Numbered from the whole stretch's first letter, positions 1 to 19,471 are shown. The stretch: 62,930 nucleotides of DNA, filler included, from Octopus bimaculoides (GCF_001194135.2; 5 parts of 5 records of this genome joined end to end with filler, not necessarily neighbours in it), one strand, 5' to 3'. Notes: generated by a model from the letters alone, not told the origin. Program-made: numbers and translations.

Positions 1-400
1 ACCGAGCGCAGCTCTGTGCGCCTTGGGTATGTGCTGTGGTTTGCTGTGGTGCTCTTATGTTTACTGTATTGAAAGTGTTTTGCGTAGGATGTGTGCAGTG
101 CCCAGTAGTGCAATTTTCTGTATGTTATATATATTTGTAAGTCCTGGTGTTTTTGTTATGTATTTGTCTGAATATTTTTTTATTATACCTAAGGCACCTA
201 CTATGATAGGAATTGTTTCTGTTTTTAGATTCCACATTCGAGTTACCTCTATTTCCAGGTCTTTGTATTTTGAAAGTTTTTCCATTTCTTTTAGGGAAAC
301 GTTGTCATCTGCTGGTATTGATACATCAATTAGAAAGCATTTTTTCTTCATCATCTTTGACAACTATATCTGGTCTATTTGCCTTAATATTGTTATTTTT
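1..400 (-). mobile_element. R4/Dong-like non-LTR retrotransposon 3' end (restriction-like endonuclease)
   Basis: IKANRPDIVVKD..CFLIDVSIP..K..KYKDLEIEV.RMW..IPIIVGALG motif with stop at 61-63. Confidence 0.85.
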
Positions 401-534
401 TAATTATTTTTTCTTCCAATTCTCTTCCATTTCTTGCCGAGTGTTTTCCGTGCACCTAGGGCAGAGAAGCTCATTCTATGCATTCTCAGTTTACACACGG
501 GAATTCACAGATAAAATATGTATTTAAAAGAAAA

Positions 535-1210
535 TTAATAAATAACTAAATTCATGAATGGATGTTGTTTACACAGCGATAATGCTCTTCTCAGTACATG
601 AGTCATTCCAGTTAGCACGATGTTTTGCACTTCCTGTAGGGATGGTGAGCCTGGTATCATTTTCAAATAGGTTTCAGTACTTTTTTTTTTATCATTCCTA
701 GAGATCCTACAATCACTGGTACGGTAGTCGCCTTGAGATGCCACATTTTTTCAGTTTCAATTAGCAAGTCTTTATATTTACTGATCTTGTCAAATTCTTT
801 CGCCGCTATATTGTGATCGCAAGGAATACTAATGTCAATTAATAATCACACCTTTTTTGTCTGATCTTTTATAATAATATCCGGTTTATTAGCTTTTATA
901 GTTTTGTCGCTATGTACCAGGAAGTCCCAGAGAATCGACACATTTTCTCCCTCAGTCACAGCTTCAGGGTGGTGTTTATACCATTTGTCAGCGGTTTTGA
1001 TTTTATAATGCCGACATATTGTCCAGTGTAAATACTGGCCGACCCTGTCATGTCTTGCCTTATATTCTACAGGTGCTAAGACTCTACATCCTGAGATCAG
1101 GTGGTCTATAGTTTCAATCTCATCGTTACAGAATCGGTATTTTGGGTCAGCTCCATTTTTTATCACATTGGCTTGGTAGTTCCGGATTAATAAGCTTTGG
1201 TCCTGTGGTC
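535..1210 (-). mobile_element. R4/Dong-like retrotransposon 3' fragment (CCHC knuckle + RLE)
   Basis: RFC..EIETIDHLISGC..RHDRV..HW..WDF..NKPDIII and VLTGMTHVLRRAL. Abuts (TTA)n. Confidence 0.85.

Positions 1211-1263
<53 letters not shown>
1211..1263. repeat. (TTA)n microsatellite
   Basis: Direct reading. Confidence 0.98.
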
Positions 1264-2045
1264 TCTCTTGATCACAGGTTTTGTTGAAACTCCGGAGCCT
1301 TGAATGCGTAGTGGGCTTGCTACTGCAGCCTACGGTACCATGCTATCCGTTCTTTTCAGCTGTCTAATACTTTCTTGATTATTCCGCCCGTGTCAAGGAG
1401 GCAAACCTTTTGTAACAGTTCTACTGGGAGCTCTATTCCAATTTTATTTATATTTCCCACGACGCCTTCTGATACTGTTCACCAGGGTTGTAGTTATCTA
1501 TCTTTTCGCCTTCCTTCTCGACTATTCGTGAGTCAAAGGGACATGCAATATCCACTCTATAGAATATGTGGTGCACCTTGTCCACCACCACTAGGACCGC
1601 TCTGTTATGCTCTAGTACCTGATCTGCTTGGATTGGGAAATCCCAGAGAATTTTGCTAGTCTCCGACTCCGCCACTCTCTGTGGTTTGTACTCATACCAC
1701 ATCTTGCCTCTCTCTAGCCCCTACTTTTCACACAGTTTCCAATGTAGCACTTTCACTACCTGATCGTATCGCCACAACTTGTAGTGGTTTACAGCAAGTC
1801 TAGGGCTTTCGTTTGAGATAGGGGCAATGGTTCCATCCACTCTATTGTAGATGTGGCACAGCAGAGACACTTGTTCATTCCTAAGGTTGACCCTCCAATT
1901 CGTGGCCAGATCTTGGTCCTGCACTGCCAGTATAGCGCTCTCGGTCTATTTTTTTAGTGTTCCTTTCTCAAACCAATCCCACCTATTTTTTCCAGAAATT
2001 TCTGTTGTGGCTACAAGAAATTGATTGTGTAGTCCCTTCTTGCGT
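1264..2045 (-). mobile_element. R4/Dong-like retrotransposon 3' fragment, third and more decayed copy
   Basis: AVQDQDLAT, VLHWKLC, ILWDFPIQAD..VDIACPFD. Confidence 0.8.
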
Positions 2046-2047
2046 AA

Positions 2048-2071
2048 TTCTTCTTCTTCTTCTTCTTCTTC

Positions 2072-2134
<63 letters not shown>
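2048..2134. repeat. (TTC)n-(TTA)n compound microsatellite
   Basis: Direct reading. Confidence 0.97.
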
Positions 2135-2860
2135 GTTCGGTTGTTGTCGCTTTGTTTTATACGAGCTGTTCCACGTCTCATTCTGAGACCTCAAGTAACA
2201 GCATGTTGCTCGTTTTATCGTGGGTGTTACTTACAAGTAGCAATGATATTTTGCAGACTAAGGAATCTAACTACTGAGAATCATAATTACATTAAAACGT
2301 TTGTGGTAATATTGGTGATCTTGTAAGAGTTGTTTCTGATTTGGGCATAAGGCCTAAAACGTCAATGAGAGGGTGTCAGTTGATGCCATCGACTCCAAAA
2401 GATCTGAAACAAATTTCATGAAGCTTTATTCTGGCATTGTAGTGATTCTCTCAGCTCACTACCTTAAATAAAATTTCTAATTTAGGCAGAAACTAAAGAA
2501 TTTCAAATAGGGGCTTTTACACCACAATCTCGACCCAAGTTCTTCACTGGTATTGTATTCTAGAGAATTGAAAGGTGATGATTACGTCGGCGTGAGTTGA
2601 ACTTCACGTTGTCAGTTCAAATTCTGCTGAAGTCATTAAGTTTGCCTTTCGTTTTTGCGTTTTTTGTATCGGTTCCACGACCCAAATTCAAATCCTGCCG
2701 TTGTCAACTTTGTCTTTCATCCACCTGGGGCCGATAAAATTAGGTACAAGTCAAATACTGCGGTCGATCGTATAGATTAAATTCCTCTCCTCGGAACTGT
2801 TGATGTTGGGCCTAAATGAGAAACTATTGTATTTTTATCATTAATATTTTTCTATATTGT

Positions 2861-3036
2861 GGCGGTGAGCTGGCAGAATCGTTAATACGCCGGACGAAAT
2901 GCTTAGCAACATTTCGTCCGTCTTTAAGTTCAAATCCCGCCGAGGTAGACTTTGCCTTTCATCCTTTCCGTGTCGATAAAACAAGGAGTTGAATGTTGAG
3001 GTCGATGTAATCGATTTACTCCTCCTCTGAAATCAA
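2861..3036 (+). mobile_element. tRNA-derived SINE family A (Nin/Deu-like core)
   Basis: Head ggcggtgagctggcagaatcgtta, B-box agttcaaatcc, core ctttgcctttcatcctttcc.gtcgataaaa. Confidence 0.85.
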
Positions 3037-3053
3037 TATTTTTTATATTTCAG

Positions 3054-3232
3054 CTGGTAAATGGATTAAAGTCTATGCTGTGTCAATGAAAGCTGGTTCG
3101 AATGTCTATGATTCCTTTCTTAACAAAGGTAATTTTTCCTCATGGAATGTAGACAAATGTAACGGTACCTTTTGCCCTAACTTCTTCCGGCATTCTATCA
3201 TTGACTCCTGGAATCATCTTCCGATTGATGAG
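3054..3232 (+). CDS. Host gene, internal coding exon A (xGKWIKVYAVSMKAG...FFRHSIIDSWNHLPIDE)
   Basis: Acceptor ttttatatttcAG at 3052-3053 and donor GAG|GTATGT at 3233. Open frame of 179 nt, phase 1 in and phase 0 out, joining exon B in frame. Confidence 0.88.
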
Positions 3233-3758
3233 GTATGTACACACATATACACACATGTTATAAGTGCGTATGCACGTACAATATGCATACTGACAGACAA
3301 ATATATGTATATTCACGAATAAAGATACTAAAGCAGCCAGCTAAATTGAACATATTTACCTGTAATCCACAGATACAGAAATCATTAATTTTTTAAATCT
3401 GAAAGACGAGGTTAAATCTAATTGCGTTTGGATTCAGAACGTAACGTAACTCTGTTACATGCCACAAAATATTTCAATAAACATAATAAAAATGACAAAA
3501 ATGCAATAATTATGACAAAAAAAAAAAATAATGACAAAAATGCTAGAACAGTCAAATAAATTGAACCTCGATAGTTTACTGATAATCATTCCTTTAGTTT
3601 TAGAAACCTGAAAGATGAAATAAAAAGATTACGACATATTATTAAAGACACGAAATTTGATCCTGTCCGGATTAATTTGCCCATTGCTGTACATCCATCC
3701 ATCCATCCATCCACCCATCCATCATCCATCATCCATCCATCCATACACACACTCATAT

Positions 3759-3789
<31 letters not shown>

Positions 3790-3889
3790 NNNNNNNNNNN
3801 NNNNNNNNNNNNNNNNNNNNNNNNNNNNNNNNNNNNNNNNNNNNNNNNNNNNNNNNNNNNNNNNNNNNNNNNNNNNNNNNNNNNNNNNN

Positions 3890-4660
3890 TGGTGACTTTG
3901 ACGTGTGCGTGTGTGTATGTGTAGGTGTGTGGATGTGGGACTAGGAAGTGGTCAGTGCTAGTGCGTGCATGGTGGTGTGATGTGATGTGATGTGGTGTTG
4001 TGTGGTATGGTGGTGTATGTAGTGGTGTGTGGTGTGGTGTGGGGGTGTTCGAATGTGGGAGAGGCGAGAGTGGGGGTAGAGGTGGGACATGCTGAAGTGG
4101 GTGTAAGGGATGGGCTGGGAGTGGGATAAGATGGAAGGTGGGGTTGGATTGTGTGGGATGGGGTTACGAGGGAGGGGTGACGATGAAGAGAAAGGAGGAA
4201 GGTGGGTAAGAGTGAAGAGAAGAGAGAAGGAGAGTAGGAGTGAAGAGAAGTAGGAGTAGGAGAGTAGGAGTGAAGAGAAGTAGGAGTAGGAGCAAGAGAG
4301 GAGAGGTAGGTGGAAGGAAGAAGGTGTGAGAGGGAGAGAGGAGAGGGGAGGAGGTTAGATGAGCCCATGTAGCGCAAAGGAGCGAAGAGAGAAGATTAAT
4401 CCCTGTTCACGGCGCAAACGGGAGTCCGGATGGCCCCTGTGCAAGGACAGTCCGAACACAGACAGGTGTTGCAAAGAGTGACCAGTAGAGCGGAAATGGC
4501 GCAAGACCGGGGTGTCATTGCCAAGTCGGATGTCTCGGAGGTGTTCCGCGAACCGGTCAGCCAAGCGGCGTCCCGTTTGACCGATGTATAAAGAAGGGCA
4601 GAGAGAGCAGGAGATGCAGTAGATAACATTGGTAGAAGTGCAGGTGAAGGAGTCGGTGAT
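3890..4660 (-). mobile_element. Penelope-like element 3' fragment: GIY-YIG endonuclease (4355-4660) plus low-complexity 3' UTR, in intron A-B
   Basis: FTCTSTNVIYCISC..C..LYIGQTGRRLADRFAEH. Confidence 0.9.
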
Positions 4661-4686
4661 ATATATATATACACACACACACATAT

Positions 4687-4733
<47 letters not shown>

Positions 4734-4810
4734 CTCTCTCTCTCACATATTCATACATATATGTATATTATTTACATATAATTATGAATATTAACTTGTT
4801 ATTTTGTTAG

Positions 4811-4974
4811 GTAAAACTCGTAATTTACAAAAACCAATCGGCTATTGTAAATATGGTGTTTGAAGGTCGAAATTCAAACATTGAAAACTGGTTCTCTATC
4901 ACAAATCTGAAAAGCTCCCCATGGCATGATCTAACTCCAGGCAACGTTCCTGTGTTCTCACTTCAAGGAAATAA
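4811..4974 (+). CDS. Host gene, coding exon B (VKLVIYKNQSAIVNMVFEGRNSNIENWFSITNLKSSPWHDL...FSLQGN)
   Basis: Branch-like ttaac, acceptor attttgttAG at 4809-4810, donor AA|GTATGT at 4975. 164 nt, phase 0 in and phase 2 out. Confidence 0.9.
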
Positions 4975-5491
4975 GTATGTCATTATTATCACTATATTTT
5001 TTATGCTTATGTCATATTACGTCCTGGGATCAATTAACACGCATATTAACTTTGCTTTTCAGCCATCTGTGGGCAATAAATGAATTATGTTTCTACCAAT
5101 TGATTGCATTTAATTGATTATAACATATCACCTGTATTCGAGAGAATACATAAAGATCATTGTTTCTCAAAAAAAAAAAACTGGTATTATTGTAAAGGAC
5201 AACTTTGACTTACATCCCTCTTAAATAATGGGCCGAACTTATCTGTGATTGTTATATTCTCTTGTGGTACTCCATCTTCCATTGCTCTTTGAGATTACCG
5301 CCTCCAGTTTGCTTTTATTACCCCCATATTTCAGGCTTAGTATCTATAGTACAAGTTCTTCTTCTTCTTCTTCTTCTTCTTCTTCTTCTTCTTCTTCTGT
5401 TAAAAAAGTACCAGTAACGCACTGTGGTTGATGTAATCGACTTAACCTACTCCCCCAAGCTGCCGTTGTGGCAAAAATTTGAAATCCTTAC

Positions 5492-5531
<40 letters not shown>

Positions 5532-5713
5532 GAGTGAGAGAGAAGTACATGCCATCAAAGTGACACTGGGGTAAAATATACGAAGCCCAGAACACCCGTC
5601 ATGGCTACTGCTGTGGCGGACCTCACCAGGTGAGAAGTGGGCTGGTCCAGTACTAATAAATGGTGAACTGACACAGTTAGTGGTTTCAGTTAGCCAGTCC
5701 CGCAGAGAGCTCA

Positions 5714-6620
5714 TAAATCTATTTTCCTACCCTTCCTTAATACCGGTTCCCATATGCTACTCATACTGCACTCGGTCTGCTTAGGAGGTTGTTGTGTCCT
5801 AGCATATGTGTTGCTTCTTTTTATTTTCGTATTTTCCAGTGGTGTTCTCTGTCTATTATTTTAGCATCATCCCACAGGCGAAGGTGGTCTCCATTTTCCA
5901 TACATGATCAGCTATACCCGATTTATCAATATCTTCTCGTGTCACAGCTTCGTGATGTTCTTCTACTCCTATTTTGAGGTGGTGGTATGTCTCGCCTTTG
6001 TATGACCTACCACAGCTGCATAGGATGGAGTTCACGCAGTATTTGGTCATATTCTCTTCTATTGGTGGTTTTACTCGAAGGAGATATTTGCGAAGTGTTG
6101 TATTACTTTTGAATACTGTACTGAGGTCATATGGGCCGCATATCTTTTGTATTTTTTCGGAGAGGCCTTTCACATAGGGTACACAGATTGTGGACCGTTC
6201 ATTGGTTTCATTCTCTCGTTTCTTCATAATTAGAGTGGATAGTATACTTTTGGGTTAGTTGTTGCTTGATAGGTTGTTATTGAGCTTAATCATTTCTTCG
6301 TGGTGTGTATCACGATCGCTACTTATATTCTTTGCACGATGTTTTAGGCACTGAGCAAATCCTCTTGTCACACTGTATGGATGACACGAGGAGATATTGA
6401 TAAATCGGGTATAGCTGATCATGTATGGAAAAATGGAGACCACCTCCTCCTGTGGGATGAAGTTGAAATGATAGACAGAGGACACCACTGGAAAATACGA
6501 AAACTAAAAGAAGCAGCACATATGCTAGGACACAAGAACCTCCTAAGCAGAGCGAGTGCGGATATGAGTAGCATATGGGAACCGGTATTAAGGAAGGGTA
6601 GGAAAATATCAGATTTATAT
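5714..6620 (-). mobile_element. Penelope-like element, 5'-truncated, with an inverted copy of its 3' end
   Basis: Minus strand PYVKGLSEKI..CSCGRSYKGET..EH..KSGIADHVW. The same C-terminal region is repeated on the + strand at about 6375-6620. Confidence 0.88.
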
Positions 6621-6626
6621 GCCCAC

Positions 6627-6699
6627 GGGCATATCGTGTAGTGGTTAAGAGCGCGGGCTACTAACCCCAAGATTCCGAGTTCGATCCCAAGCAGTGACC
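6627..6699 (+). mobile_element. tRNA-like (Pol III A/B box) segment following the PLE copy
   Basis: A-box tgtagtggttaag and B-box gagttcgatcc. Acceptor stem is imperfect, so not called a tRNA gene. Confidence 0.6.
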
Positions 6700-6952
6700 G
6701 GGATCAGCCGAAACGTTGTGTTAAGAAACAAGATGAGGGCAAATATCCGTCAAATGTAAATAATGTACATAATTCCCCATCTCTTAAATATAGAACTGTA
6801 TTTTCTCTTTCTTTTACCCCTCTTCAAGTAGATCCTGTGTACATTCGCCTTAGGTTGTAGGGCACTATACATCGTCATTGTCTTTCCAGTAGTGCTATCG
6901 AGTTGGTTAATCTGCGCTTGTGTCTATTTTAGGATAGGTGCAATATAGCGGA

Positions 6953-6989
<37 letters not shown>

Positions 6990-7011
6990 TTCATTATTAC
7001 TATTATTATTA

Positions 7012-7045
<34 letters not shown>

Positions 7046-7053
7046 GTTATTAA

Positions 7054-7273
7054 GGCGGCGACCTGGCAGAATCGTTAGCACGCCGGACAAAATACCTAGC
7101 GACATTTCGCCCGTCTTCATGTTCTGAGTTCAAATTCTGCCGAGGTCGACTTTACCTTTCATCCTTTTAGTGTCGATAAAATAAGTACCAGTCGATCACT
7201 GGGGTCGATGTAATCGATTATCCCCTCCTCCAAACTTGTTGACCTTGTGCCAAAATCTGAAATCATTATTATT
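7054..7273 (+). mobile_element. SINE family A, full length, inside a (TTA)n tract
   Basis: Head, core and tail gaaatcattattatt. Confidence 0.9.
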
Positions 7274-7283
7274 TCTTCCATAG

Positions 7284-7447
7284 CTTAAACCGCTACTTCT
7301 ATATAGGGCGTTTCGAAGGTGCGTGTGAGGCAGATCGTGGCTGGCTGGTTGTTATTCAAGGTCCACGCACATGTCCATATGCAGTTTTACAGCATTACCC
7401 TTCAATTTTCTATGCCAGCACGGATTCCCAAACCACCTGGGCAAGCG
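7284..7447 (+). CDS. Host gene, coding exon C (NLNRYFYIGRFEGACEADRGWLVVIQGPRTCPYAVLQHYPSIFYASTDSQTTWAS)
   Basis: Acceptor tttcttccatAG at 7282-7283, donor G|GTGAGT at 7448. 164 nt, phase 2 in matches exon B. No stop codons. Absent from the ORF track. Confidence 0.9.
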
Positions 7448-7509
7448 GTGAGTCTTTTGTCGTCTTTTCTTTCACATTTTCTCTAAGTATTTGTGTTCCT
7501 TTCAATGTA

Positions 7510-7543
<34 letters not shown>

Positions 7544-7894
7544 AGCAACTACTACTACTACTACTACTACTACCGTTGCTGTTGCTGATGCTGTTGCTGC
7601 TGCTGTTAGCACTACTTTTGTAATTGTTATACATATTGGAACCGGCGTGGGTGTGTGATAAGGAGTTTGTTTCCTAATTACATGGTTTCGGGTTCAGTCC
7701 CACTGCGTGGCACTTTAGGCAAGTGCCTTGATTATAATTCCGCAACCTTACCTCACCTTAGAAAAATCAATTTTTGTAATTTTTTTAATTTCAATTAACT
7801 TTCTTAAACTTGGTTAAAATTACAAATACTTTATTAAAATATAAGTTTTGTAGCATAATATTTAATAGTTATGATAAACCTTTCTACTGGAAGT

Positions 7895-8065
7895 ACGAGG
7901 CCCCAAATTTGGGGGAAGGGATTAAGTCGATTACCTCGACCCCAGTGCGTAAGTGGTACTTATTCAAACTACCCCAAAAGGGGATGAAAGACAAAGACGA
8001 CCCCGGCGGAATTTGAACTCAAAACGTAGCGGTAGACGCGCAAACGATTCTGCCAGTTCGCTGCC
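7895..8065 (-). mobile_element. SINE family A
   Basis: Reverse complement of head and core. Confidence 0.8.
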
Positions 8066-8071
8066 TTATTA

Positions 8072-8299
8072 CTGGGTTGTCCGGAAAGTTCGTGCCGATT
8101 TTTAAAGGGAAGAAAAAGATCAATAAATACTTGCCATTACATTTTTAATCAACCAAATATGAACCATTTTGTTGCACAATACGTCTCCATCTTCACTTCA
8201 ACTTGAAAATACCCTCTTCCCAGAATTGAGGTGGTTTCATGGCAAATAAGTCGAAAGATAAGCTGCTATAAATCGGCACGAACTTTCCGGACAACCCAA
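8072..8299 (-). mobile_element. Internally deleted mariner element (MITE-like)
   Basis: About 30-bp TIRs (ctgggttgtccggaaagttcgtgccgattt / aaatcggcacgaactttccggacaacccaa) flanked by TA. Interior encodes the transposase C-terminus KPPQFWEEGIFKL..RWRRIVQQNGSY. Confidence 0.9.
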
Positions 8300-8879
8300 T
8301 AATAGTTGTAATAATAATACAATCTTTTTAACATAATTTTCTCAAGAACCTCTTCATCCTTACTTCTCAGTCACATTTCAGTCACCTCCTCTTACTCCCT
8401 TCTTTCTTTGTTTCTTTACTCTCCCTCCTACTTATATTCTCCTACCCCTTTCTATCAGTCATCCCTTCTTTATATATTTCTTTCTCTCTGCCTCTCTTTC
8501 TCTGTCTTCCCCGGTGTCTCTTCTGTTTGCTTTTCTCTCTCTACCACTCTCCTTTCTTTCTATGTTTGTTTACAATCCATACTCCGACTACCGCCAAAGT
8601 TCGCCGCGTAGAGAAAGGTAAATATAATACGTTCCCTCTCTGATAGAGAAAAAGCATTCACAAAAATTCAGTGGAGCCTGGTCAAATATAACAACAACAA
8701 CAACGACACAAACGGCCACAACAACACAAACAACAACAGCAACAGTAAAAATTTATTCTTTTATTAGCCGCAAGGGCTCACATACATAAAACATTAAATA
8801 ACATGCAACAACATAAAAGACAAAAACAGGACGATAGAATGGGTTTTACAGCGTGTATACAATATAAATAAAAATTAGA

Positions 8880-9310
8880 ATTGAACAAATTAAAACCCCT
8901 AATTGAGGAGGTGCTTTAAGGTCCTCGTGGAAAAACCCAGAAAAGCCACGGGTGTCTGATCAACAGGGCAAGAACACTTCTTTAATTTTTTTTTCATAGG
9001 TGTACACTCAGAATTGGTCGTTTCATACTGGCCATTCTTCCAACATTCACCTACCTTTCAGCAAAGTTGCTACAAGGCAACACTTCCCTCTCTACCCTCA
9101 ACTTCCTTTTCAATTGAAACTTGAAAAAGTTGATGAGACTTTGGCCAAAGAGGAAAGTGTCTGTCTTTAGCCCTTTCAAACGGGTCCACCATACTACCTA
9201 TTTCGCCACAGCCTCCAGACAAATAAGAATTACCTGCTCCTCCCGGCCAAAAGAGGACGGCGGGGCAATCTTCACACTGGATTCAGCTGATAGCCGGATT
9301 CGTCCCACTA
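8880..9310 (-). mobile_element. Tx1/L1-like LINE 3' end
   Basis: VVWWTRLKGLKT..LINFFKFQLKRKLRVEREVL..FAERWV. Confidence 0.65.
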
Positions 9311-9553
9311 CGACAACAGTCATAATACCTCCGAACATATTGACAATGACACCAACAGAAACGGTAACTTCACAAACAGCAGCAACAACAACCATCGCGA
9401 TGACAACGCGAACGAACACACACTAGAACAATATTTTGTCAAGTTTGCTTCTACAGATATTTTATAGAAATTTATAGCCAGCACTGATTTTTGCTACAAC
9501 GTTTCGTATCGAGATGTCAGATGTAAACAATGTGACAGAAGACAAAAATGGGC

Positions 9554-9607
9554 AATGAGTGTATATGCCATATTTCGGGTGTTGTTTCCCCTTCATCAAC
9601 ACTCATC
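9554..9607 (-). ncRNA. Type I hammerhead ribozyme-like motif (core has C3U)
   Basis: GAUGAGUG-UUGAUGA-A-GGG(GAAACAACA)CCC-GAA-AUAU(GGC)AUAU-A-CACUCAUU. All three stems pair. Confidence 0.7.
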
Positions 9608-9938
9608 TAACCTATTGTTGCCTCCGAACACATTGCATATATAGCCACCGCATACAGCAGCGTTAAGTTATTGAATATATCAAATTTACATATTAGACGC
9701 ATTCTTGGTGGCTGCTGTGTAAACATTAATGATTTGTAGTATGTGGTACTTCGTTATGCAAACATAATATACTATAAAATATACTAAATGTTTTTCTCAA
9801 TCAGTACCACGTTCCACTGCGTCAGCTTCTTACATTATTTTGTTAAGGTTGTTTCTATAAATCGACAGCCTGCCCAACTACATCCAGGCGATGCAACCCA
9901 AGATCACCAATGTGAGGGAAACAACGGTATGGGAGTAT

Positions 9939-9994
<56 letters not shown>

Positions 9995-11146
9995 NNNNNN
10001 NNNNNNNNNNNNNNNNNNNNNNNNNNNNNNNNNNNNNNNNNNNNNNNNNNNNNNNNNNNNNNNNNNNNNNNNNNNNNNNNNNNNNNNNNNNNNNNNNNNN
10101 NNNNNNNNNNNNNNNNNNNNNNNNNNNNNNNNNNNNNNNNNNNNNNNNNNNNNNNNNNNNNNNNNNNNNNNNNNNNNNNNNNNNNNNNNNNNNNNNNNNN
10201 NNNNNNNNNNNNNNNNNNNNNNNNNNNNNNNNNNNNNNNNNNNNNNNNNNNNNNNNNNNNNNNNNNNNNNNNNNNNNNNNNNNNNNNNNNNNNNNNNNNN
10301 NNNNNNNNNNNNNNNNNNNNNNNNNNNNNNNNNNNNNNNNNNNNNNNNNNNNNNNNNNNNNNNNNNNNNNNNNNNNNNNNNNNNNNNNNNNNNNNNNNNN
10401 NNNNNNNNNNNNNNNNNNNNNNNNNNNNNNNNNNNNNNNNNNNNNNNNNNNNNNNNNNNNNNNNNNNNNNNNNNNNNNNNNNNNNNNNNNNNNNNNNNNN
10501 NNNNNNNNNNNNNNNNNNNNNNNNNNNNNNNNNNNNNNNNNNNNNNNNNNNNNNNNNNNNNNNNNNNNNNNNNNNNNNNNNNNNNNNNNNNNNCAAAAAG
10601 AGACCGATAGAATAGGTACTAGGCTTACAAAGAATAAGTCCTTGCGGTCGATTTGCTCAACTAAAGGCGGTGCTCCAGCATGGCCACAGTCAAATGACTG
10701 AAACAAGTACAAGAATAAAAGAATTCCTTTGCACTTTTTTGAAATGCTCATCTCCTTAGCAGACAAATCTTATTTTTAAAGGGGTGGGGTGAGGAATACC
10801 ACCTCTTCCCTTTTATATCATTTCTTTTAGAGGCACAAGTAGACGTTTTTGATGGGGATTAAGGTCGGAAGTAGATGAATACTGGAATGGAGGAGAGAAA
10901 AGAAAAAGGAGGGCGGAGGAGGAACATGAACAAAGGTAGGCTCAGGATGAAGGATGATGAGCTATTTGAAGAAGAAAGATAGAAGGAGGTGACCTCATGA
11001 CCATATAGAAGTCCTTTTGGGGAAATCCCCGTTGTTAATATTGATGTTTATATAACAGCTCAGCCATAGTTAGCACCAGCAGTACAATAATAGCAACAAC
11101 TGCAGCGGTAACAGTATTAGTAGTAATGATAGTAGTAATAGTAGTC

Positions 11147-11629
11147 GGTGTTACTGTTCCTTTTCATGAAATAGTAGTAGTGAGCCGTTGTTTGTAGAGT
11201 ATACTAAGCAAATTAATTGCTGATTCTACAGACAACAGCCAGGATTCTTGTTTACATTGAGAGATCTGGCGGCAGCGTTGACTGAAGGAAAACCAACGAT
11301 GTTAAAACACTGGTATTTCAGAGTCCGCTTACGTCACGGAATCGTGTGTGTCGTCAGCACATCGTCTGAAAGGCACAAGTTGTTCTCCGAAGACGAAATG
11401 CAACAGCAATTATCAAATTCACGCTCAAATCTGCCAAAATAAGTTACGAATCAATGTGAGGATCATCGAGTTGTTATTGTTGTTGTTGTTGTTGTTGCTG
11501 ACGCAGTTGTTCTTGTTACTGTTTTTGCTATAGTGTTACTGTTTTGTTCTAGTTGATGTTTTTGTTGTTGTACAGTTTTTGCAGTTGTTACTGTTTTTCT
11601 TGTCATTGATAATGTTGTTGTTTTTGTAA

Positions 11630-11683
<54 letters not shown>

Positions 11684-11883
11684 GTGTTCTTCTTGTTCAT
11701 GTAGTACCAAATAGCTCTTTGTTTTATAGAGTACAGTAAACAGATTAATTGCTGATTCTATAGGCAAGAGGCAGCGTTCTTGTTTTCATTCAGGGATCGG
11801 GAAGCAGCCTTGACTGAAGGGAAACAATGATGTCAAAACACTGGCGTTTCAAAGTTTCCTTAATCACTGAATCGAGTGTGTTG
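11147..11883 (+). repeat. Two diverged direct copies (about 200 bp, period about 532 bp), each preceded by (TAG)n and carrying a hammerhead-like relic
   Basis: 11147-11350 aligns by eye to 11683-11883. Confidence 0.75.
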
Positions 11884-12414
11884 TTAATGATATTCTTTTT
11901 TTTTTTTTCTTTTTCAGGACCTGGAGTGGCTGATTCCTTGGCTATATTTATCCGTTTGATTCCAAACTGACCAATCACACGATCTCTCTTGCTACTATTA
12001 TTGTTGTTGTTGTTGTTAACATCTATGCTTACACGATGACCATCATCACTGACAATATGTCAAGCGTCACTTAAAATTCAATAACCAACTCAATCCTTCA
12101 GCAATCTTTTGTTATCAATCACTTTTACTATTTCTCTCCATCTAGAGTAACACAATTATTGTTATTATTTAACACCCTGTTAATTGTCATCAAGATCTAT
12201 AATAAAAAGCCTTCCAGATGAGACCTTCATGATTTTTGGAATTATTCCTGTAAGTTATCTAATGTGTCAGTTTCAATTTTCAGATGGTGAGGTCTTGTTT
12301 GATGACGGTTTGGTTGCTATTTGTAGCAGGACCCGCAGCCACTTAGAAACTCTATCTCGTGTTTTCTTATATATGCTGTGTTGCTTCTTTGTGTGTATCT
12401 GTATGTGTGTGTGT

Positions 12415-12643
12415 TATTTCGTTACTGCCCACAAGGGGCTACACACAGAGGGGACAAACAAGGACAGACAAACGGATTAAGTCGATTATACCGACCCCAG
12501 TGCGTAACTGGTACTTATTTAATCGACCCCGAAAGGATGAAAGGCAAAGTCGACCTCGGCGGAATTTGAACTCAGAACGTAGCGGCAGACGAAATACCGC
12601 TAAGCATTTCGCCCGGCGTGCTAACGATTCTGCCAGCTCGCCG
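12415..12643 (-). mobile_element. SINE family A, long-tail monomer, near full length
   Basis: Head, core and tail ccccttgtgggcagtaacgaaata. Confidence 0.92.
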
Positions 12644-12807
12644 TGTGTGTATGAGTTGTATATGTGTGTGCGTGTGCGTGTAACGTGCAACGTGCGAACA
12701 TCTAAATTTCCTCAGTGCCTTTGCAATGTGTGTGTGCATTCAAGTTGAGATTTCTGGCGTTAGCTTGGTATGCATAGGAGCGTATGTACTCAGGGGCTGG
12801 ACTAGTA

Positions 12808-13224
12808 TACTCTTCTACTCTTTACTCTTTTACTTGTTTCAGTCATTTGACTGCAGCCATGCTAGAGCACCGCCTTTAGTCGAGAAAATCGACCCCAGGA
12901 CTTATTCTTTGTAAGCCTAGTACTTATTCTATCGGTCTCTTTTTGCTGAACCGCTAAGTTACGGGGACGTAAACACACCAACATCGGTTGTCAAGCGATG
13001 GTGGGGGGACAAACACAGACACACAAACATATACAAAAACATACATATATATATATACATACGACGGGCTTTCAGTTTCCATCTGCCAAATCCACTCACA
13101 AGGCTTTGGTCGGCCCGAGGCTATAGTAGAAGACACTTGTCCAAGGTGCCACGCAGTGGGACTGAACCCGGAACCATGTGGATGGTGAGCAAGCTACTTA
13201 CCACACAGCCACTCCCACGCCTAT
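12808..13224 (-). mobile_element. tRNA-derived SINE family B, full length, with internal microsatellite linker
   Basis: Head ggagtggctgtgtggtaag..gggttcagtcccactgcgtggcaccttgg, tail aatgactgaaacaagtaaaagag. Confidence 0.92.
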
Positions 13225-13432
13225 GAATATAAGTGTGTAGGTATATGTGTAAACTTTTGCAAGACATTTCCTGAGTGTGCGCTGCTATAACGTATGTGTG
13301 TGCTGTAGCAAGTGAATGGGCAAATGCAGATTGCAGTGTTAATTTCTATATGTGAATGTTGCCGAGGTTCAATCGAGAATTCATAGTTAAGTTCATAGAA
13401 TACAAGAGAAGTGGGATATAAGTAGGTTGTTT

Positions 13433-14303
13433 TTGTAGGCGCAGGAGTGGCTGTGTGGTAAATAGCTTGCTTACCAACCACATGGTTCCGGGTTCATTCG
13501 CACTGCGTGACACCTTGGGCAAGTGTCTTCTACTATAGCTTCGGTCCACCAAAGCCTTGTGTGTGGATTTGGTAGACGGAAACTGAAAGAAGGCCGTCGT
13601 GTATATGTATATATATATATAATACAAAGAATATATATACATGTATACACACATATATGTACATACTTACATCTACATGTGTATATATATGCATATCAGG
13701 GTACAGGACATTAGAACAATGAACTACAGACAACGGAACGAACACATAGAGAGCCACTTGGAATATTCCTTCATCAGCTGCCTCTATTCTAACCTGACGT
13801 TTCGAAGATAAGACAGAACGTTCTCTAGAATAGTCTCTTCCTGAGTAGTGGATCAACCCACTACACAGAGGATTCCAAGACAGGAAAAATTGGACAGTGA
13901 AAACAACATTCAAAAGCCGTACGGCCAAACGCGAATCTGAGGTAGAACGCTAGTAGTTCGTCTTGCCTTCACAGCGGCTGGAGTGAAAAGAAAGCTGACC
14001 ACAGGTCACACGAGAGCAGAGAGGATGGTGGAGGGAGGAAGTGGAACAAGGAGGAAGGGACAGAAAGGTATAGCAGTGAAGTAGAGGCCTTTGTATATGT
14101 TTGTGTGTCTGTGTTTGCCCCCCAACATCGCTTGACAACCGATGCTAGTGTGTTTACGTCTCCGTAACTTTGCGGTTCGGCAAGAGAGACCGATAGAATA
14201 AGTACTAGGCTTACAAAGAATAAGTCCTGGGGTCGATTTGCTCGACTAAAGGCGGTGCTCCAGCATGGCCGCAGTCAAATGACTGAAACAAGTAAAAGAG
14301 TAA
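13433..14303 (+). mobile_element. SINE family B split by a minus-strand PLE-terminal fragment (about 13640-14090)
   Basis: 5' half at 13433-13620, 3' half at 14094-14303. Confidence 0.85.
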
Positions 14304-14879
14304 GTACAGTATTGTTGAGATTCCAATGAAAGAGCTTTGGATCTAGGTTAGAAACCGGTTCTTTCTCCATAGGCAAGAAATCTTGAAATAAATTGAATAA
14401 TGACACACAGACACACACACACACACATTTATTTATTAATAATATATATACATACATATATACATACATCTCTCTCTATCTATATATATATTATATATAT
14501 ATATAATATATGTACAGAGTAAAGATTGTATACCAAAATAACGTGGTAGTCGACGAATGCTACTGCTATTTAGCCCCAGGAAACATCGTATCCATCTGGC
14601 TATACGGCACACTCTCTGTGTCCTTATATTTTCAAACAAGGGAGTTTACCATCCCCACTCACCACAAAACAATATCTGCCTATCGTGATTCTAGGTTATT
14701 TCCCTTCATCAGCACAGAGTAACTGTTCGGATAGAGGTGGCGCTGCTAAATTCTTGTTCGGAATATATAGTTTTCAAAGTGACACACAGGCATTGAGCTA
14801 ATAAAATAGAAAATTTACTATTTGTAAATCTCTCAACGAGAAACATTCAGTAACAGTACTCTAGAATACTGTCTCTTCT

Positions 14880-15450
14880 ATCCATCTTCTGTCTGTCTGC
14901 TTTCCTCTCTTTCTTTCCAACTAGTTCACCTCACCTACTAAAATTGAAGCAGATTTGATCAAGTCCGTTAGATCTTTTTGGGTTGCGCGTTTCACATTGT
15001 TACAGTCGAAGCGTCTTAGATTCACCGGCTTAGTCTCTGTTCTTGTAATTATTATATCATCGAGTCTTTTCCTGAGGTTTCTCTGTTCCTCACTCATATC
15101 CCCTCTTATTTCAGGGTTTTCTACATTATATTGATTGGCCGGCCTCTCCTCCACTACAACTTCACCTTGACTACGCATTCGCTGACCTTCACCTACGTTA
15201 TTCTTTTCGAGATTCTCACCCCTACAGAGGCTTTTCCTGTGGCACCTTCACGATTGGTTCTAATTCCGTTCACACCGTTATCATCATTTATTTTGCTTGA
15301 AATTTTCACTCACAAATGAGGTGTTTTTTTAGGTTACTACCAACCGATATCTTTATCTGGACACCATCTCCATCAAGGCAGGGTCCTTGCTCCTCTGGTT
15401 TGGGGCTTGGAGGGTTCCTTCTCCTAGGCTGCTTGCCACCCAGCTTAGGA
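14880..15450 (-). mobile_element. R4/Dong-like retrotransposon 5'/N-terminal fragment abutting (TTA)n at 15452-15513
   Basis: EEQRNLRKRL..TDLIKSASILVGE resembles the N-terminal region of these ORFs. Confidence 0.55.
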
Positions 15451-15513
<63 letters not shown>

Positions 15514-15835
15514 GTTAAGGCGGCGAGCTGGAATAATCATTAGGGCACTGGACGAAATACTAAGCGGTGTTTCGCTCTTCGCTACGGTCTGAGTTCGAAT
15601 TCCGCCGTTCATACTTTCAGGGTCGATAAAATAAGGGAAGTTTTGTTTCATTATGTTCTTCTTTGTGCGTAAACATGACTTGGTTGTAATATGATTGTTG
15701 CTCTTCTTGTGTACTTACATCTAAGCACTGTATTTGGTGAATCGACGAGTTTGTTGGTGTTGATTTTGTCTATGTGATTTTATGTGTATCTTTGCTGGAT
15801 GTGAGAGATAAAGGTCTACGTATCAGTTTACAGTT

Positions 15836-15879
<44 letters not shown>

Positions 15880-15882
<3 letters not shown>

Positions 15883-16075
15883 TCTCCCCAACATCGCTTG
15901 ACAACCGATGCTGGTGTGTTTACGTCCCCGTAACATAGCGGTTCGGCAAAAGAGACCGATAGAATAAATACTAGGCTTCCAAAGAATAAGTCCTGGGGTC
16001 GACTTGCCCGACTAAAGACGGTACTCCAGCATGGCCGCAGTCAAATGACTGAAACAAGTAAAAGAGAAAAGAGAA
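15880..16075 (+). mobile_element. SINE family B 3' half
   Basis: Matches 14094-14303. Confidence 0.88.
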
Positions 16076-16519
16076 ATCGTCACGTTTCGGTGTTAAAGGA
16101 ATGTTTTCACCTTTTCTTTTCCGACCACGTAACAATTTAGTTGAAGGCTAATTTGTTTCAGTGCAATGCAAAGTGAAAGCTCTGTAAAATTTCACGAAGC
16201 CAAGAAATTCACAAAACTTTTGTAACGGAATGGGAGTTGACATGTGCAAAAATGAAATTCAAATCACTTGTCACTTCATGAATAAATTCTCAGAATTCCG
16301 GGGCTCAAAAGTCACTCTAACGGGATTTATATTGGTCAAAATGTTTGGTAGTAATAATAGCTTTTGCTGAGAACTGGATGAGAGTTTTAAACATCTTTTG
16401 ATATCGCTGTCTGCGAACGAAGCTAGACTTCAATTTTCAGGAAACGGAAAAATCATTATGTTTTGTTTATCTGTTTACGTCGTTGCGACAATGAACGACT
16501 GAAGAATATGAAACCGTGA

Positions 16520-16910
16520 TTGTTGTTGTTGTTGACTCTCCGTCGCTTACGACGTCGAGGGTTCCAGTTGATCCGATCAACGGAACAGCCTGCTCGTGAA
16601 ATTAACGTGCAAGTGGCTGAGCACTCCACAGACACGTGTACCCTTAACGTGGTTCTCGGGCATATTCAGCGTGACACAGTGTGACAAGGCTGACCCTTTG
16701 AATTACAGGCACAACAGAAACAGGAAGTAAGAGTGAGAGAAAGTTGTGGTGAAAGAGTACAGCAGGGTTCGCCACCATCCCCTGCCGGAGCCTCGTGGAG
16801 CTTTAGGTGTTTTCGCTCAATAAACACTCACATCGCCTGGTCTGGGAATCGAAACTGCGATCCTATGACCGCGAGTCCGCTGCCCTAACCACTGGGCCAT
16901 TGCGCCTCCA
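16520..16910 (-). mobile_element. tRNA-Arg-like SINE family C with (CAA)n tail
   Basis: Head ggaggcgcaatggcccagtggttagggcagcggactcgcgg, tail gacggag..caacaacaac. Confidence 0.92.
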
Positions 16911-17320
16911 CGAAACTGTGATAACAACAAGTCAAATATGCTTCAAAATACTATCTATTGCTGTAAAAGAAAAAGGATTATTGAAAATGCCGAAAACTGG
17001 CTAGAAATAGCAGTCACAGTTATTTACTGTTGCTATATGATCGGCTGGAATTTCATCAGTGTGGGAATGGCTCGTGGAAATGACTTCTGGCTCTAGCATC
17101 TGTTGAACGTTTGATGCGAACAATAGAGAAGGCAGGTCACCAAGTTAGGAGTAACATTCAGCTGACAAAGACGTTGGAGTTAACATTTTAGTATAAAGAC
17201 ATCCACGGGTATTTTTCTTTTGTCGTCTGCGGTCATCATTATAATACCGTTGGAAGTATACAGTATTAAGTAGGCTGCTTGTAAAGGCAAGAATGACAAC
17301 ACTAATATTTGAATTTTCAG

Positions 17321-17367
17321 ATAATTTTGTTAACCCGGAACGTTTGCATTTATATGAATACAAATAG
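17321..17367 (+). CDS. Probable terminal coding exon D (DNFVNPERLHLYEYK*)
   Basis: Branch point ACTAAT at 17301-17306 plus ttttcAG at 17319-17320. Phase 1 is compatible with exon C. Spacing resembles the recalled C-terminal WxxGxVxxADxMxIF pattern of similar proteins. Needs a 9.9-kb intron. Confidence 0.5.
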
Positions 17368-17415: not shown

Positions 17416-17748
17416 TCTTCTGCAATTCAGTATGTTAGATAATTTATATCTTCTGCAATTTAGTTTGTTAGATAATTTATATCTTCTGCAATTCAGTATG
17501 TTAGATAATTTATATCTTCTGCAATTCAGTTTGTTAGATAATTTATATCTTCTGCAATTTAGTTTGTTAGATAATTTATATCTTCTGCAATTTAGTTTGT
17601 TAGATAATTTATATCTTCTGCAATTCAGTATGTTAGATAATTTATACCTTCTGCAATTCAGTATGTTAGATAATTTATACCTTCTGCAATTCAGTATGTT
17701 AGATAATTTATATCTTCTGCAATTTAGTNNNNNNNNNNNNNNNNNNNN
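17416..17748 (+). repeat. 33-bp minisatellite, about 10 copies, running into a gap
   Basis: Unit tatgttagataatttatatcttctgcaattcag. No spacers. Confidence 0.97.
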
Positions 17749-19048: not shown

Positions 19049-19471
19049 AGTGGCTGTGTGGTAAGAAGCTTGCTTCCCAACCACATCGTTCCAGGTTCAA
19101 TCCCACTGCGTGGCACCTTGGGCAAGTACCTTCTTCTATTATAGCCTCGAGCCGACGAAAGCCTTGTGAGTGGATTTGGTAGACGGAAACTGAAAGAAGC
19201 CCGTCGTATATGTGTATGTGCGTGTGTGTGTGTGTGTGTGTGTGCCTGTGTGTGTGTGTGCGTGCGTGTGTTTGTGTGTGTCCCTCCACCATCGCTTGGC
19301 AATCGATGCTGGTGTATTTACGTGACCGTAACTTAGCGGTTCGGCAAAAGAGATCCGACAGAATTAGTACTAGTCTTACAAAGCGTAAGTGCTAGGGACG
19401 ATTTCTTCGACTAAAGCCGGTGCTCCAGCATGACCGCAGTCGAATGACTGAAATAAATAAAAGAATAAAAG
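19049..19471 (+). mobile_element. SINE family B, full length
   Basis: Complete head, linker and tail. Confidence 0.9.

What the first reader, a model, noticed from the sequence alone, without database searches (positions are those of the whole stretch)
3054..17367. Hidden spliced gene encoding an unnamed, probably secreted domain
Seen: three exons with canonical GT-AG sites whose phases chain exactly (1/0, 0/2, 2/1) into one stop-free peptide, plus a phase-compatible last exon. The protein has GKWIKV, FRHSIIDSW, NWFS..SSPWHDL, RYFYI..GAC..DRGWLVV and YPSIFYA motifs, four Cys and three N-glycan sequons (NFS, NGT, NQS). Inference from recall: it belongs to an uncharacterised domain family expanded in molluscs, often downstream of a PAN/Apple domain. 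I know no assigned function; a recognition or lectin-like role is speculation.
Basis: partly seen in the sequence, partly recalled or inferred. Interest (0 to 1): 0.72.

Follow-up and report, generated by a model that had tools for sequence, protein, structure and literature searches.

The report
Octopus gene with divergent fibrinogen-like domain

Summary
Exons 3054-3232, 4811-4974 and 7284-7447 have AG/GT borders and chain into one open frame. Their product is identical to residues 111-277 of RefSeq XP_052833659.1, the 294-aa product of O. bimaculoides LOC106882135. So the gene is real, but it is not hidden in the current annotation.

The true one is 11918-11970, encoding (G)PGVADSLAIFIRLIPN*.

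Exon 1 carries the putative signal peptide and a PAN-like region. It lies about 2.6-3.0 kb before window position 1, behind assembly gaps. Both N runs inside the finding are intronic.

The ~185-aa domain has no Pfam or PDB sequence match. It still belongs to a large family of 974 clusters in molluscs, amphioxus, echinoderms and some bacteria. True PAN_1 domains often precede it.

In bacterial and metagenomic "bridge" proteins, a canonical fibrinogen-domain start (CDM..GGGW) runs straight into this domain. A confident model (pLDDT 88) finds fibrinogen-like folds first, but only weakly.

Most likely this is a secreted PAN-like plus divergent fibrinogen-related recognition protein. Its function is inferred, not shown.

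The parts
3054..3232 (+). It encodes (T)GKWIKV...HLPIDE, including the first beta-strand of the domain and the conserved WNVDKC..CPNFFRH loop.
   Evidence: AG/GT borders and frame. tblastn E 1e-24 to 1e-38 against paralogues and P0183.
4811..4974 (+). It encodes VKLVIYKNQS...FSLQGN.
   Evidence: AG/GT borders. 100% identity to P0003 and P0183.
7284..7447 (+). It encodes (N)LNRYFYIGRFEGACEADRGWLVV...TTWAS(G).
   Evidence: AG/GT borders. tblastn to P0003/P0183 covers this exon at 96.5%, with the only mismatches at the splice-junction end of the alignment; the spliced product is identical to P0183.
11918..11970 (+). True last coding exon (exon 5). It reads GA|CCT...AAC TGA and encodes (G)PGVADSLAIFIRLIPN*, the final beta-strand of the domain.
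   Evidence: Acceptor ttttcag at 11911-11917. 100% identity to P0003/P0183 and family consensus ADSMAIFIRL.
11971..12206 (+). Probable 3' UTR, up to an AATAAA at 12201-12206. This is an inference from the sequence only.
   Evidence: Sequence read. No transcript evidence is available.
3790..3889 (.). Assembly gap inside the intron between exons 2 and 3, flanked by (CATC/TACA)n and GT-rich microsatellites.
9995..10593 (.). Assembly gap inside the intron between exons 4 and 5, preceded by (GA)n.
17321..17367 (+).

Best explanation
The window holds coding exons 2-5 of Octopus bimaculoides LOC106882135 (XP_052833659.1, 294 aa). These lie at 3054-3232, 4811-4974, 7284-7447 and 11918-11970. It is one member of a clustered, fast-diverging Octopus gene family.

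Exon 1 carries the putative signal peptide plus a ~70-aa, two-Cys, PAN/Apple-like region. It lies outside the piece, upstream, behind two assembly gaps.

The four exons in the window encode one compact ~185-aa domain of mixed beta-strands and short helices, with two probable disulfides. I read this domain as a strongly diverged fibrinogen-related domain (FReD):
- It starts at the strand that corresponds to the FReD 'GGGWTV' strand.
- It has lost the N-terminal half of the A subdomain and its disulfide.
- It keeps a C-x4-GW[LM]-x7-8-C element that resembles the P-subdomain C..GGWW..C.
- It ends in a strand (MAIFIRL) that resembles the FReD terminal 'MKIRP' strand.

By analogy with ficolins, tachylectin-5, snail FREPs and intelectins, and with PAN modules, the product most likely works as a secreted soluble binding protein. 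The target would be a glycan or another surface ligand. The PAN-like module would add a second binding or oligomerising surface.

Shown: the gene structure, family membership, the breadth of the family, and the sequence bridge to the FReD N-terminus. Inferred: homology of the rest of the domain to the FReD B/P subdomains, secretion, and any binding function.
For: Gene.
- AG/GT borders and a single open frame.
- Exact identity of the spliced product to P0183, and 100% DNA identity of the window to CM046628.1.
- Exon 1 has an ATG and an A|GTAAGA donor, and ACT (Thr) forms across the junction.
- The paralogue P0016 has the same exon layout.

Family.
- 30 Octopus proteins.
- 974 clusters at E<=1e-3 and 566 at E<=1e-10 in the representative library.
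- Members occur in Branchiostoma, Mytilus, Gigantopelta, Pomacea, Asterias, Acanthaster, Anneissia and Myxococcota.
- The domain sits in mosaic proteins with ZP, Sushi, TSP1, EGF, VWD, F5/8C and kringle/ADAMTS modules.
- All invariant family columns are kept in the window's protein.

PAN.
- PAN_1 scores 26-29 bits against a cut-off of 21.4 in P0091, P0101 and P0105.
- 15 of 71 members have a PAN_1 hit.
- The Foldseek search with the P0002 model hits HGF and plasminogen PAN modules and the SML-2 lectin, with prob 0.9-0.97 on short alignments.

FReD link.
- The nine bridge repeats from P0081, P0084, P0086 and P0093 match Pfam Fibrinogen_C positions 2-61 (59-72 bits, cut-off 22). Two of the four also match COLFI around positions 22-70: P0086 (82.9 bits) and P0093 (27.4 bits, just above the 26.2 cut-off).
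- The same repeats match PDB fibrinogen, ficolin, angiopoietin and intelectin sequences at E down to 1e-10 over profile positions 7-74.
- hhalign of these repeats against a FReD profile gives Prob 96.4% and E 1e-9.
- The family profile aligns from that same GGGW strand to the repeat end, at E 1e-30 to 1e-45. hhalign gives Prob 100% and E 5.5e-49 over 185 columns.
- The AlphaFold model of paralogue P0005 has pLDDT 88.2 and pTM 0.84. Most of its 50 best Foldseek PDB hits, including 8 of the top 10, are fibrinogen-like domains aligned over about 210-240 columns.
- UniProt names the family member P0094 'Fibrinogen C-terminal domain-containing protein'.
- PAN+FBG architectures are already reported in molluscs (PMC7588048).
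Against: - Direct tests of FReD membership fail for the octopus protein itself. Pfam gives no Fibrinogen_C hit even at E<=10. The family profile finds nothing in PDB sequences at E<=10. hhalign of the family profile against a fibrinogen-gamma/FGL1 profile gives Prob 0.1%.
- The Foldseek matches are weak: E 0.02-0.7 and TM 0.28-0.40, with none at E<=1e-3.
- The sequence bridge rests on only about 25 shared residues, the GGGW strand plus the following loop. Everything after that is linked to FReDs only by fold resemblance and by motif patterns that I judged by eye.
- The PAN-like region of this gene's own protein gives no Pfam hit.
- No expression, secretion or binding data were available, and no paper mentions the locus.
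Confidence: 0.68

Rival explanations
1. The domain is an independent fold that is not derived from a fibrinogen-related domain. On this view the bacterial 'bridge' proteins merely place a truncated FReD A subdomain in front of it, and the shared GGGW-type first strand is a junction artefact or convergence.
For: There is no profile-profile signal between the family and canonical FReDs beyond the first strand. Foldseek TM is only 0.28-0.40 with E>0.01. Pfam Fibrinogen_C alignments in the bridge proteins stop at about position 52-61 of 221.
Against: The family profile itself includes the strand aligned to GGGWTV (W-x-[LKV]-x-[FY]), and the following G-x-G/S..Y..W loop aligns to FReD DGSVDF..W. 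Two independent models both return FReDs as the dominant hit class over their full length. One member is flagged as a fibrinogen C-terminal domain by UniProt's automatic rules. The total length of the bridge repeats (about 230 aa) equals that of a whole FReD.
Confidence: 0.22
2. The locus is a decaying or unexpressed paralogue (pseudogene) in a tandemly expanded family, and the RefSeq model is only an ab initio join of conserved exons.
For: The introns are heavily invaded by SINE and Penelope-like fragments. Exon 1 is separated from exon 2 by two assembly gaps. One nearly invariant Pro (FRHP) is Ser here. I had no transcript data.
Against: All four exons in the window, plus exon 1, are open with canonical splice sites. 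There are no frameshifts or stops. Every invariant family column and all four Cys are retained.
Confidence: 0.07
3. One reading: the transcript ends in exon D (17321-17367), as the main or an alternative isoform.
For: It has an AG acceptor, a compatible phase and a short open frame ending in a stop.
Against: The encoded 15 residues match no family member. This isoform would delete the terminal beta-strand (ADSLAIFIRL), which is conserved from bacteria to octopus and modelled at pLDDT about 95. The true exon at 11918 has a 20-nt polypyrimidine tract and is used in both RefSeq models.
Confidence: 0.03

Closest known systems
Fibrinogen-related domain (FReD/FBG; Pfam PF00147, PROSITE PS51406), as in ficolins, tachylectin-5A, angiopoietins, FGL1 and molluscan FREPs
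   Same: It is an extracellular globular domain of about 200 aa at the C-terminus of secreted proteins. It is preceded by a signal peptide plus an accessory module, which is PAN here, coiled coil in some gastropod members, and IgSF, EGF or PAN in snail FREPs. The first strand and following loop are homologous through bridge sequences. FReDs are the best structural matches. The family shows lineage-specific tandem expansion and fast divergence: about 50-57% identity among Octopus paralogues and between Octopus species.
   Different: There is no PF00147 hit. It lacks the N-terminal half of the A subdomain and its C...CDM disulfide. The B/P region is unrecognisable by profile comparison. TM is only about 0.35-0.40. 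The Ca2+ site and acetyl-binding pocket residues cannot be mapped.
Intelectins / X-type lectins (ITLN1, XEEL)
   Same: They are a precedent for a lectin family that keeps only a short canonical FReD-like N-terminal segment, while the rest of the domain has diverged beyond sequence recognition. The bridge profile hits ITLN1 and XEEL in the same N-terminal segment.
   Different: Intelectins retain the CDM..GGGW segment, which the octopus domain lacks. Intelectin structures were not among the top 50 Foldseek hits. No sequence similarity was seen in the C-terminal part.
PAN/Apple-FBG proteins of molluscs (one Biomphalaria glabrata FREP, Crassostrea gigas and Lottia gigantea FReDs)
   Same: They share the order signal peptide, then PAN/Apple, then fibrinogen-type domain, in molluscan secreted proteins (PMC7588048). 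True PAN_1 occurs upstream of this domain in Mytilus, Gigantopelta and Asterias members.
   Different: The published proteins carry canonical FBG domains. Here the C-terminal domain is the divergent type, and the PAN region of the octopus proteins is below Pfam's threshold.
Fibrillar collagen C-propeptide (COLFI, PF01410)
   Same: Two of the four bridge proteins match COLFI around positions 22-70: P0086 clearly (up to 82.9 bits) and P0093 marginally (27.4 bits against a 26.2 cut-off). This is the same N-terminal element as in FReDs. One family member gave a weak COLFI hit (E 4e-4).
   Different: There is no COLFI hit for the octopus protein. No collagen C-propeptide structure appeared among the top fold matches. 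There is no collagen repeat upstream.

Membership tests
The unnamed PAN-associated domain family (profiles A2/A3 built here) | Full-length profile match, including W-x-K-x-Y first strand, C..C..F/H-R-H..LD.W, VKLxLYK hairpin, WFS...L.SS.W.DL, RRFYI, C..D.GWL...C, and the terminal AD.MAIFI strand. | tested here: met
   The window's peptide has E 3.5e-62 to its closest relatives. It keeps all invariant columns. P0183 scores 423 bits against the A2 profile.
Fibrinogen-related domain (PF00147 / PS51406) | Significant match to the curated family model. | tested here: not met
   There are no Pfam hits at E<=10 for the window peptide, P0183, P0005 or P0094. PROSITE was not available, but UniProt's name for P0094 suggests that PROSITE flags some members.
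Fibrinogen-related domain (PF00147 / PS51406) | Profile-profile or transitive sequence homology to canonical FReDs. | tested here: inconclusive
   The direct hhalign test is negative (Prob 0.1%). The transitive link through bridge repeats is strong on both sides: E 5.5e-49 to the family, and E 1e-9 to 1e-10 to FReDs. The two alignments overlap only over about 25 residues.
Fibrinogen-related domain (PF00147 / PS51406) | Three-subdomain (A, B, P) fold. | tested here: inconclusive
   The model has pLDDT 88.2. FReDs dominate the Foldseek list, but with E 0.02-0.7 and TM 0.28-0.40.
Fibrinogen-related domain (PF00147 / PS51406) | N-terminal A-subdomain disulfide (C ... C-D-M) preceding GGGWTV. | tested here: not met
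   The octopus domain begins at the GGGW-equivalent strand. The CDM motif is present only in the bacterial and metagenomic members.
Fibrinogen-related domain (PF00147 / PS51406) | P-subdomain disulfide C-x-GGWW-x-C, the Ca2+ site and the ligand pocket. | tested here: inconclusive
   A C-x4-GW[LM]-x7-8-C element is conserved (C128 and C144 invariant; G133, W134 and L135 at >=90%). It is paired with NCA..GWW..C only in a zero-confidence greedy alignment. Ca2+ and pocket residues cannot be mapped.
PAN/Apple domain (PF00024) | Match to the Pfam PAN models above the gathering score, upstream of the domain. | tested here: inconclusive
   This gene's protein P0183 has no hit. Octopus paralogues score E 0.03-0.07, below the cut-off. 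Distant members score above the cut-off. The P0002 model hits PAN structures at prob 0.9-0.97 but at E of about 0.03-0.14. The exon that encodes this region lies outside the window.
Secreted protein | Cleavable N-terminal signal peptide and no transmembrane segment. | not testable with these tools
   The N-terminus MFQFTPTKPAVITVLLLNLALTLVVTS looks like a signal peptide. No predictor is available, and the exon is outside the window.

The most novel reading that the evidence does not exclude
The domain represents an ancient branch of the fibrinogen-related superfamily that has no Pfam model of its own. It comprises about 1000 clusters at 50% identity, in molluscs, echinoderms, amphioxus and Myxococcota-type bacteria. 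Its bacterial members preserve the ancestral junction with the canonical A subdomain. In octopuses this branch, fused to a PAN-like module, has expanded into a fast-evolving secreted repertoire. That repertoire would play a pattern-recognition role parallel to snail FREPs, giving cephalopods a distinct diversified lectin family.
Probability: 0.3. Interest if true: 0.55.

Novelty: new variant of a known kind. Interest (0 to 1): 0.33.

Why it matters
For annotation.

For protein-family curation. The work points to a large extracellular domain family with no Pfam model. That family can now be tied to the fibrinogen/COLFI superfamily through bridge sequences, which gives hundreds of 'uncharacterized' invertebrate proteins a testable hypothesis: ligand- or glycan-binding recognition modules.

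For cephalopod biology. A clustered, rapidly diverging PAN-plus-FReD-like family is a reasonable candidate for innate-immune or surface-recognition functions. Nothing here demonstrates such a function.

Tried and rejected
1. The spliced peptide could not be submitted directly to the structure or representative searches. I used the paralogues P0002 and P0005 as targets instead.
2. I searched for exon 1 inside window 1-3053 by tblastn with six family proteins at E<=10 and found nothing. It lies outside the piece.
3. The apparent in-frame similarity just upstream of exon A (SSEINIFYIS vs SNEISFYRYS) is SINE-derived sequence containing a stop, so it is not coding.
4. First model, P0002 with 25 sequences: pLDDT 66, too poor to judge the C-terminal domain.
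Against a 108-sequence fibrinogen-gamma/FGL1 alignment it also found nothing. That FReD profile was narrow (Neff 2.7), so this negative result is weak.
6. DUF7922 (PF25538) scored 32 bits on the four-repeat amphioxus protein P0032. It gave no hit on a single repeat and did not appear among the 25 family hits listed for the 71 members. I treat it as a summed weak similarity, not as the family's model.
7. Rfam and tRNA scans of the window found nothing.
8. Literature searches for the locus and protein accessions found nothing. A general search for an unnamed PAN-associated domain also found nothing.
9. Pfam on intronic ORFs gave only a sub-threshold GIY-YIG hit.


Full report
**Observation**

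I read the three claimed exons and the claimed last exon and translated them. Exons 3054-3232, 4811-4974 and 7284-7447 are each bounded by AG and GT. Their lengths are 179, 164 and 164 nt, which gives intron phases 1/0, 0/2 and 2/1. Joined, they read as one open frame: GKWIKVYAVS...TTWAS. The frame carries the quoted motifs, four Cys and three N-x-S/T sequons.

**Is it real?**

- The joined peptide has no Pfam hit at E<=10 and no PDB sequence hit better than E 0.17.
- It does find 30 proteins from Octopus bimaculoides, O. sinensis and O. vulgaris, at E 1e-22 to 3.5e-62.
- tblastn places that tail at 11917-11967. The sequence shows a 20-nt polypyrimidine tract and the acceptor ttttcag|GA at 11917/11918. 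The stop is at 11968-11970, and an AATAAA lies at 12201-12206.
- Every complete family member ends with the same ADSMAIFIRL-type strand.

**Locus identity**

The 90% cluster of P0003 also holds XP_052833659.1 (P0183, 294 aa, LOC106882135). Residues 111-294 of P0183 are exactly exons A+B+C plus the true last exon.

The window is 100% identical to CM046628.1 of GCA_001194135.2 (locus L002, coordinates = window + 12961). It is bounded on both sides by assembly gaps.

Exon 1 lies at L002 10001-10325. It has an ATG and an A|GTAAGA donor, and A+CT gives Thr110 across the junction. That places exon 1 about 2.6-3.0 kb before window position 1, behind two N runs. This explains why no signal-peptide or PAN exon was found in window 1-3053.

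The paralogue LOC106871660 (P0016, locus L001) has the same layout, with exon 1 (aa 1-100) only about 0.6 kb upstream of exon 2.

**Assembly gaps**

The N runs at 3790-3889 and 9995-10593 lie in the introns after exon 2 and after exon 4. They are flanked by microsatellites. The spliced product aligns to paralogues with no missing block at either junction. No coding sequence depends on continuity across the gaps. Both gaps persist in the chromosome-level assembly.

**The family**

- A profile built from 25 Octopus proteins (A2) found 974 clusters (at 50% identity) with E<=1e-3, and 566 with E<=1e-10.
- Named members come from amphioxus, crinoid and starfish species, bivalves, gastropods and a Myxococcota MAG.
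- In large proteins the domain occurs 1-4 times. It sits beside ZP, Sushi, TSP1, EGF, VWD, F5/8C, kringle/ADAMTS, TIG or FG-GAP modules. It is therefore a mobile extracellular module.
- Small members often have a genuine PAN_1 domain upstream, above Pfam's cut-off in P0091, P0101 and P0105. Across the alignment, 15 of 71 members have a PAN_1 hit.
- Some gastropod members instead have a signal peptide plus a coiled coil.
- In Octopus the N-terminal region scores only E 0.03-0.07 for PAN models, and nothing for P0183 itself. The P0002 model's N-terminal part does hit HGF and plasminogen PAN modules and the SML-2 lectin, at prob 0.9-0.97 and E of about 0.03-0.14.

For this gene it is only suggestive.

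**What the domain is**

With a 71-sequence alignment (A3), AlphaFold gave a confident model of the paralogue P0005, which is 56% identical to this gene's product. The model has pLDDT 88.2 and pTM 0.84.

Foldseek against the PDB returned no hit at E<=1e-3. Most of the 50 best hits, including 8 of the top 10, are fibrinogen-like domains: fibrinogen beta/gamma, ANGPTL2/3/6, FGL1, Ang2, ficolins and MFAP4. These are aligned over about 206-241 columns, at E 0.02-0.7 and TM 0.28-0.40. The poorer first model gave the same hit class.

Sequence evidence comes from four bacterial or metagenomic members: P0081, P0084, P0086 and P0093.

- Each of their nine repeats starts with a textbook FReD A subdomain, C..L..G...G.Y.IDP......V.CDMT.DGGGW.
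- Pfam recognises this as Fibrinogen_C positions 2-61 (59-72 bits). In P0086 (82.9 bits) and marginally in P0093 (27.4 bits, cut-off 26.2) it also recognises COLFI around positions 22-70.
- PDB FReD and intelectin sequences match it at E down to 1e-10.
- hhalign against a FReD profile gives Prob 96.4% and E 1e-9.
- The family profile aligns from that same GGGW strand to the end of each repeat, at E 1e-30 to 1e-45. hhalign gives Prob 100% and E 5.5e-49 over 185 columns.
- The two alignments overlap on the strand and loop GGGWTMVYKHS.G....W, which corresponds to GNGWTVFQKRLDGSVDF..W in fibrinogen gamma and W.K.YA.S.GAGS.VY.S in Octopus.
- UniProt's automatic name for the Pomacea member P0094 is 'Fibrinogen C-terminal domain-containing protein'.

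Against this:

- The family profile shows no direct similarity to PDB sequences.
- It shows none to a fibrinogen-gamma sequence.
- It shows none to a 108-sequence gamma/FGL1 profile.
- The pairing of C..D.GWL...C with NCA..GWW..C appears only in a zero-confidence greedy alignment.

My reading, at about 70% confidence, is that this is a FReD derivative. It has lost the first half of the A subdomain and remodelled the B/P subdomains beyond sequence recognition, much as intelectins did. The main rival, at about 20%, is an unrelated domain that bacteria fused behind a truncated A subdomain.

**Function**

Nothing was measured. The N-terminus encoded by exon 1 looks like a signal peptide, and four Cys and three sequons fit a secreted glycoprotein. 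FReDs and PAN modules are both classic binding modules for glycans and proteins, and PAN+FBG proteins are reported in molluscs (PMC7588048).

The Octopus family is clustered on one chromosome. P0008, P0013, P0016, P0019, P0027 and P0183 are all on a contig of the same length as CM046628.1, and P0016 and P0183 were confirmed on it directly. It diverges quickly: 50-57% identity among paralogues, and 57.5% to the best O. sinensis match. This pattern is typical of recognition repertoires.

The most likely mechanism is therefore a soluble recognition or adhesion protein. I rate this functional statement at roughly 35-40%.

**Surroundings**

- The introns are full of repeats. tRNA-derived SINE copies end 20-60 nt upstream of the acceptors of exons 2 and 4.
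- A Penelope-like GIY-YIG ORF fragment lies in intron 2.
- Other TE-like ORFs and many microsatellites are present.
- A 33-bp tandem array runs from 17416 into the terminal gap.
- No second family copy, no Rfam family and no tRNA were found in the window.

**Verdict**

The gene is already annotated, as 'uncharacterized'. The added value here is the corrected structure and the link between the unnamed domain and the fibrinogen-related superfamily. Interest is modest.

Noticed in passing
window ~2860-3045 and ~7055-7265 (+); further copies near 5426 (+) and 7925 (-): tRNA-derived SINE copies in the gene's orientation end just upstream of the acceptors of exons 2 and 4. The 17-mer GGTCGATGTAATCGATT occurs exactly at 3000 and 7203, giving 4 matches at <=2 mismatches against 0.01 expected. 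The SINE tail may contribute the polypyrimidine tract of both acceptors.
   Followed up: partly
window 17416-17728: A 33-bp tandem repeat (TCTTCTGCAATTCAGTATGTTAGATAATTTATA) is present in 9.5 copies with 96% matches. It runs into the assembly gap that ends the piece and creates a spurious 114-aa ORF.
   Followed up: no
window 4355-4684 (-), 5856-6227 (-), 61-363 (-), 846-1166 (-): Transposon-like ORF fragments lie in introns and upstream sequence. One has a sub-threshold GIY-YIG hit (E 2.4e-4, Penelope-like). The others look like retrotransposon ORF tails by eye but gave no Pfam hit.
   Followed up: partly
window 1-203 and 300-388 vs L001 10527-10831: The first ~390 bases of the piece are 94-98.5% identical, in the same orientation, to intron 1 of the paralogue LOC106871660. 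That is far more similar than the exons (~50-60% aa). It could be a young TE at the same relative position or a case of gene conversion. This is unresolved.
   Followed up: no
L001 13259-19446 (paralogue LOC106871660 / P0016): The RefSeq model P0016 stops after exon 3 (...SINGAL). Two exon-4-like segments lie downstream, at 14267-14446 and 19261-19446. The model is probably truncated, or a partial tandem duplication is present.
   Followed up: no
P0081 (Myxococcota MCK6544734.1), P0084, P0086, P0093: Bacterial or metagenomic giant proteins with TIG or FG-GAP repeats carry 2-3 C-terminal repeats. These repeats combine a canonical fibrinogen/COLFI-type N-terminal element with this family's C-terminal body. 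Such proteins are an unusual bacterial occurrence of a fibrinogen-type domain. Either horizontal transfer or contamination is possible.
   Followed up: partly
Family alignment A1/A3, window peptide residues 30-47 (WNVDKCNGTFCPNFFRHS): The most invariant stretch among Octopus paralogues (W-N-V-D-K-C..C-P-N-F-F-R-H) falls in the least confident part of the model (pLDDT ~61-65). It is reduced to C..C..H.R in distant members. It may be a lineage-specific disulfide-stapled loop and a candidate functional site. This gene has Ser where paralogues have a near-invariant Pro.
   Followed up: no
P0032 (Branchiostoma, 1211 aa): Pfam DUF7922 scores 32 bits (cut-off 25) on the protein with four tandem copies of the domain, but nothing on a single copy. 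It looks like a summed weak similarity of unclear meaning.
   Followed up: partly
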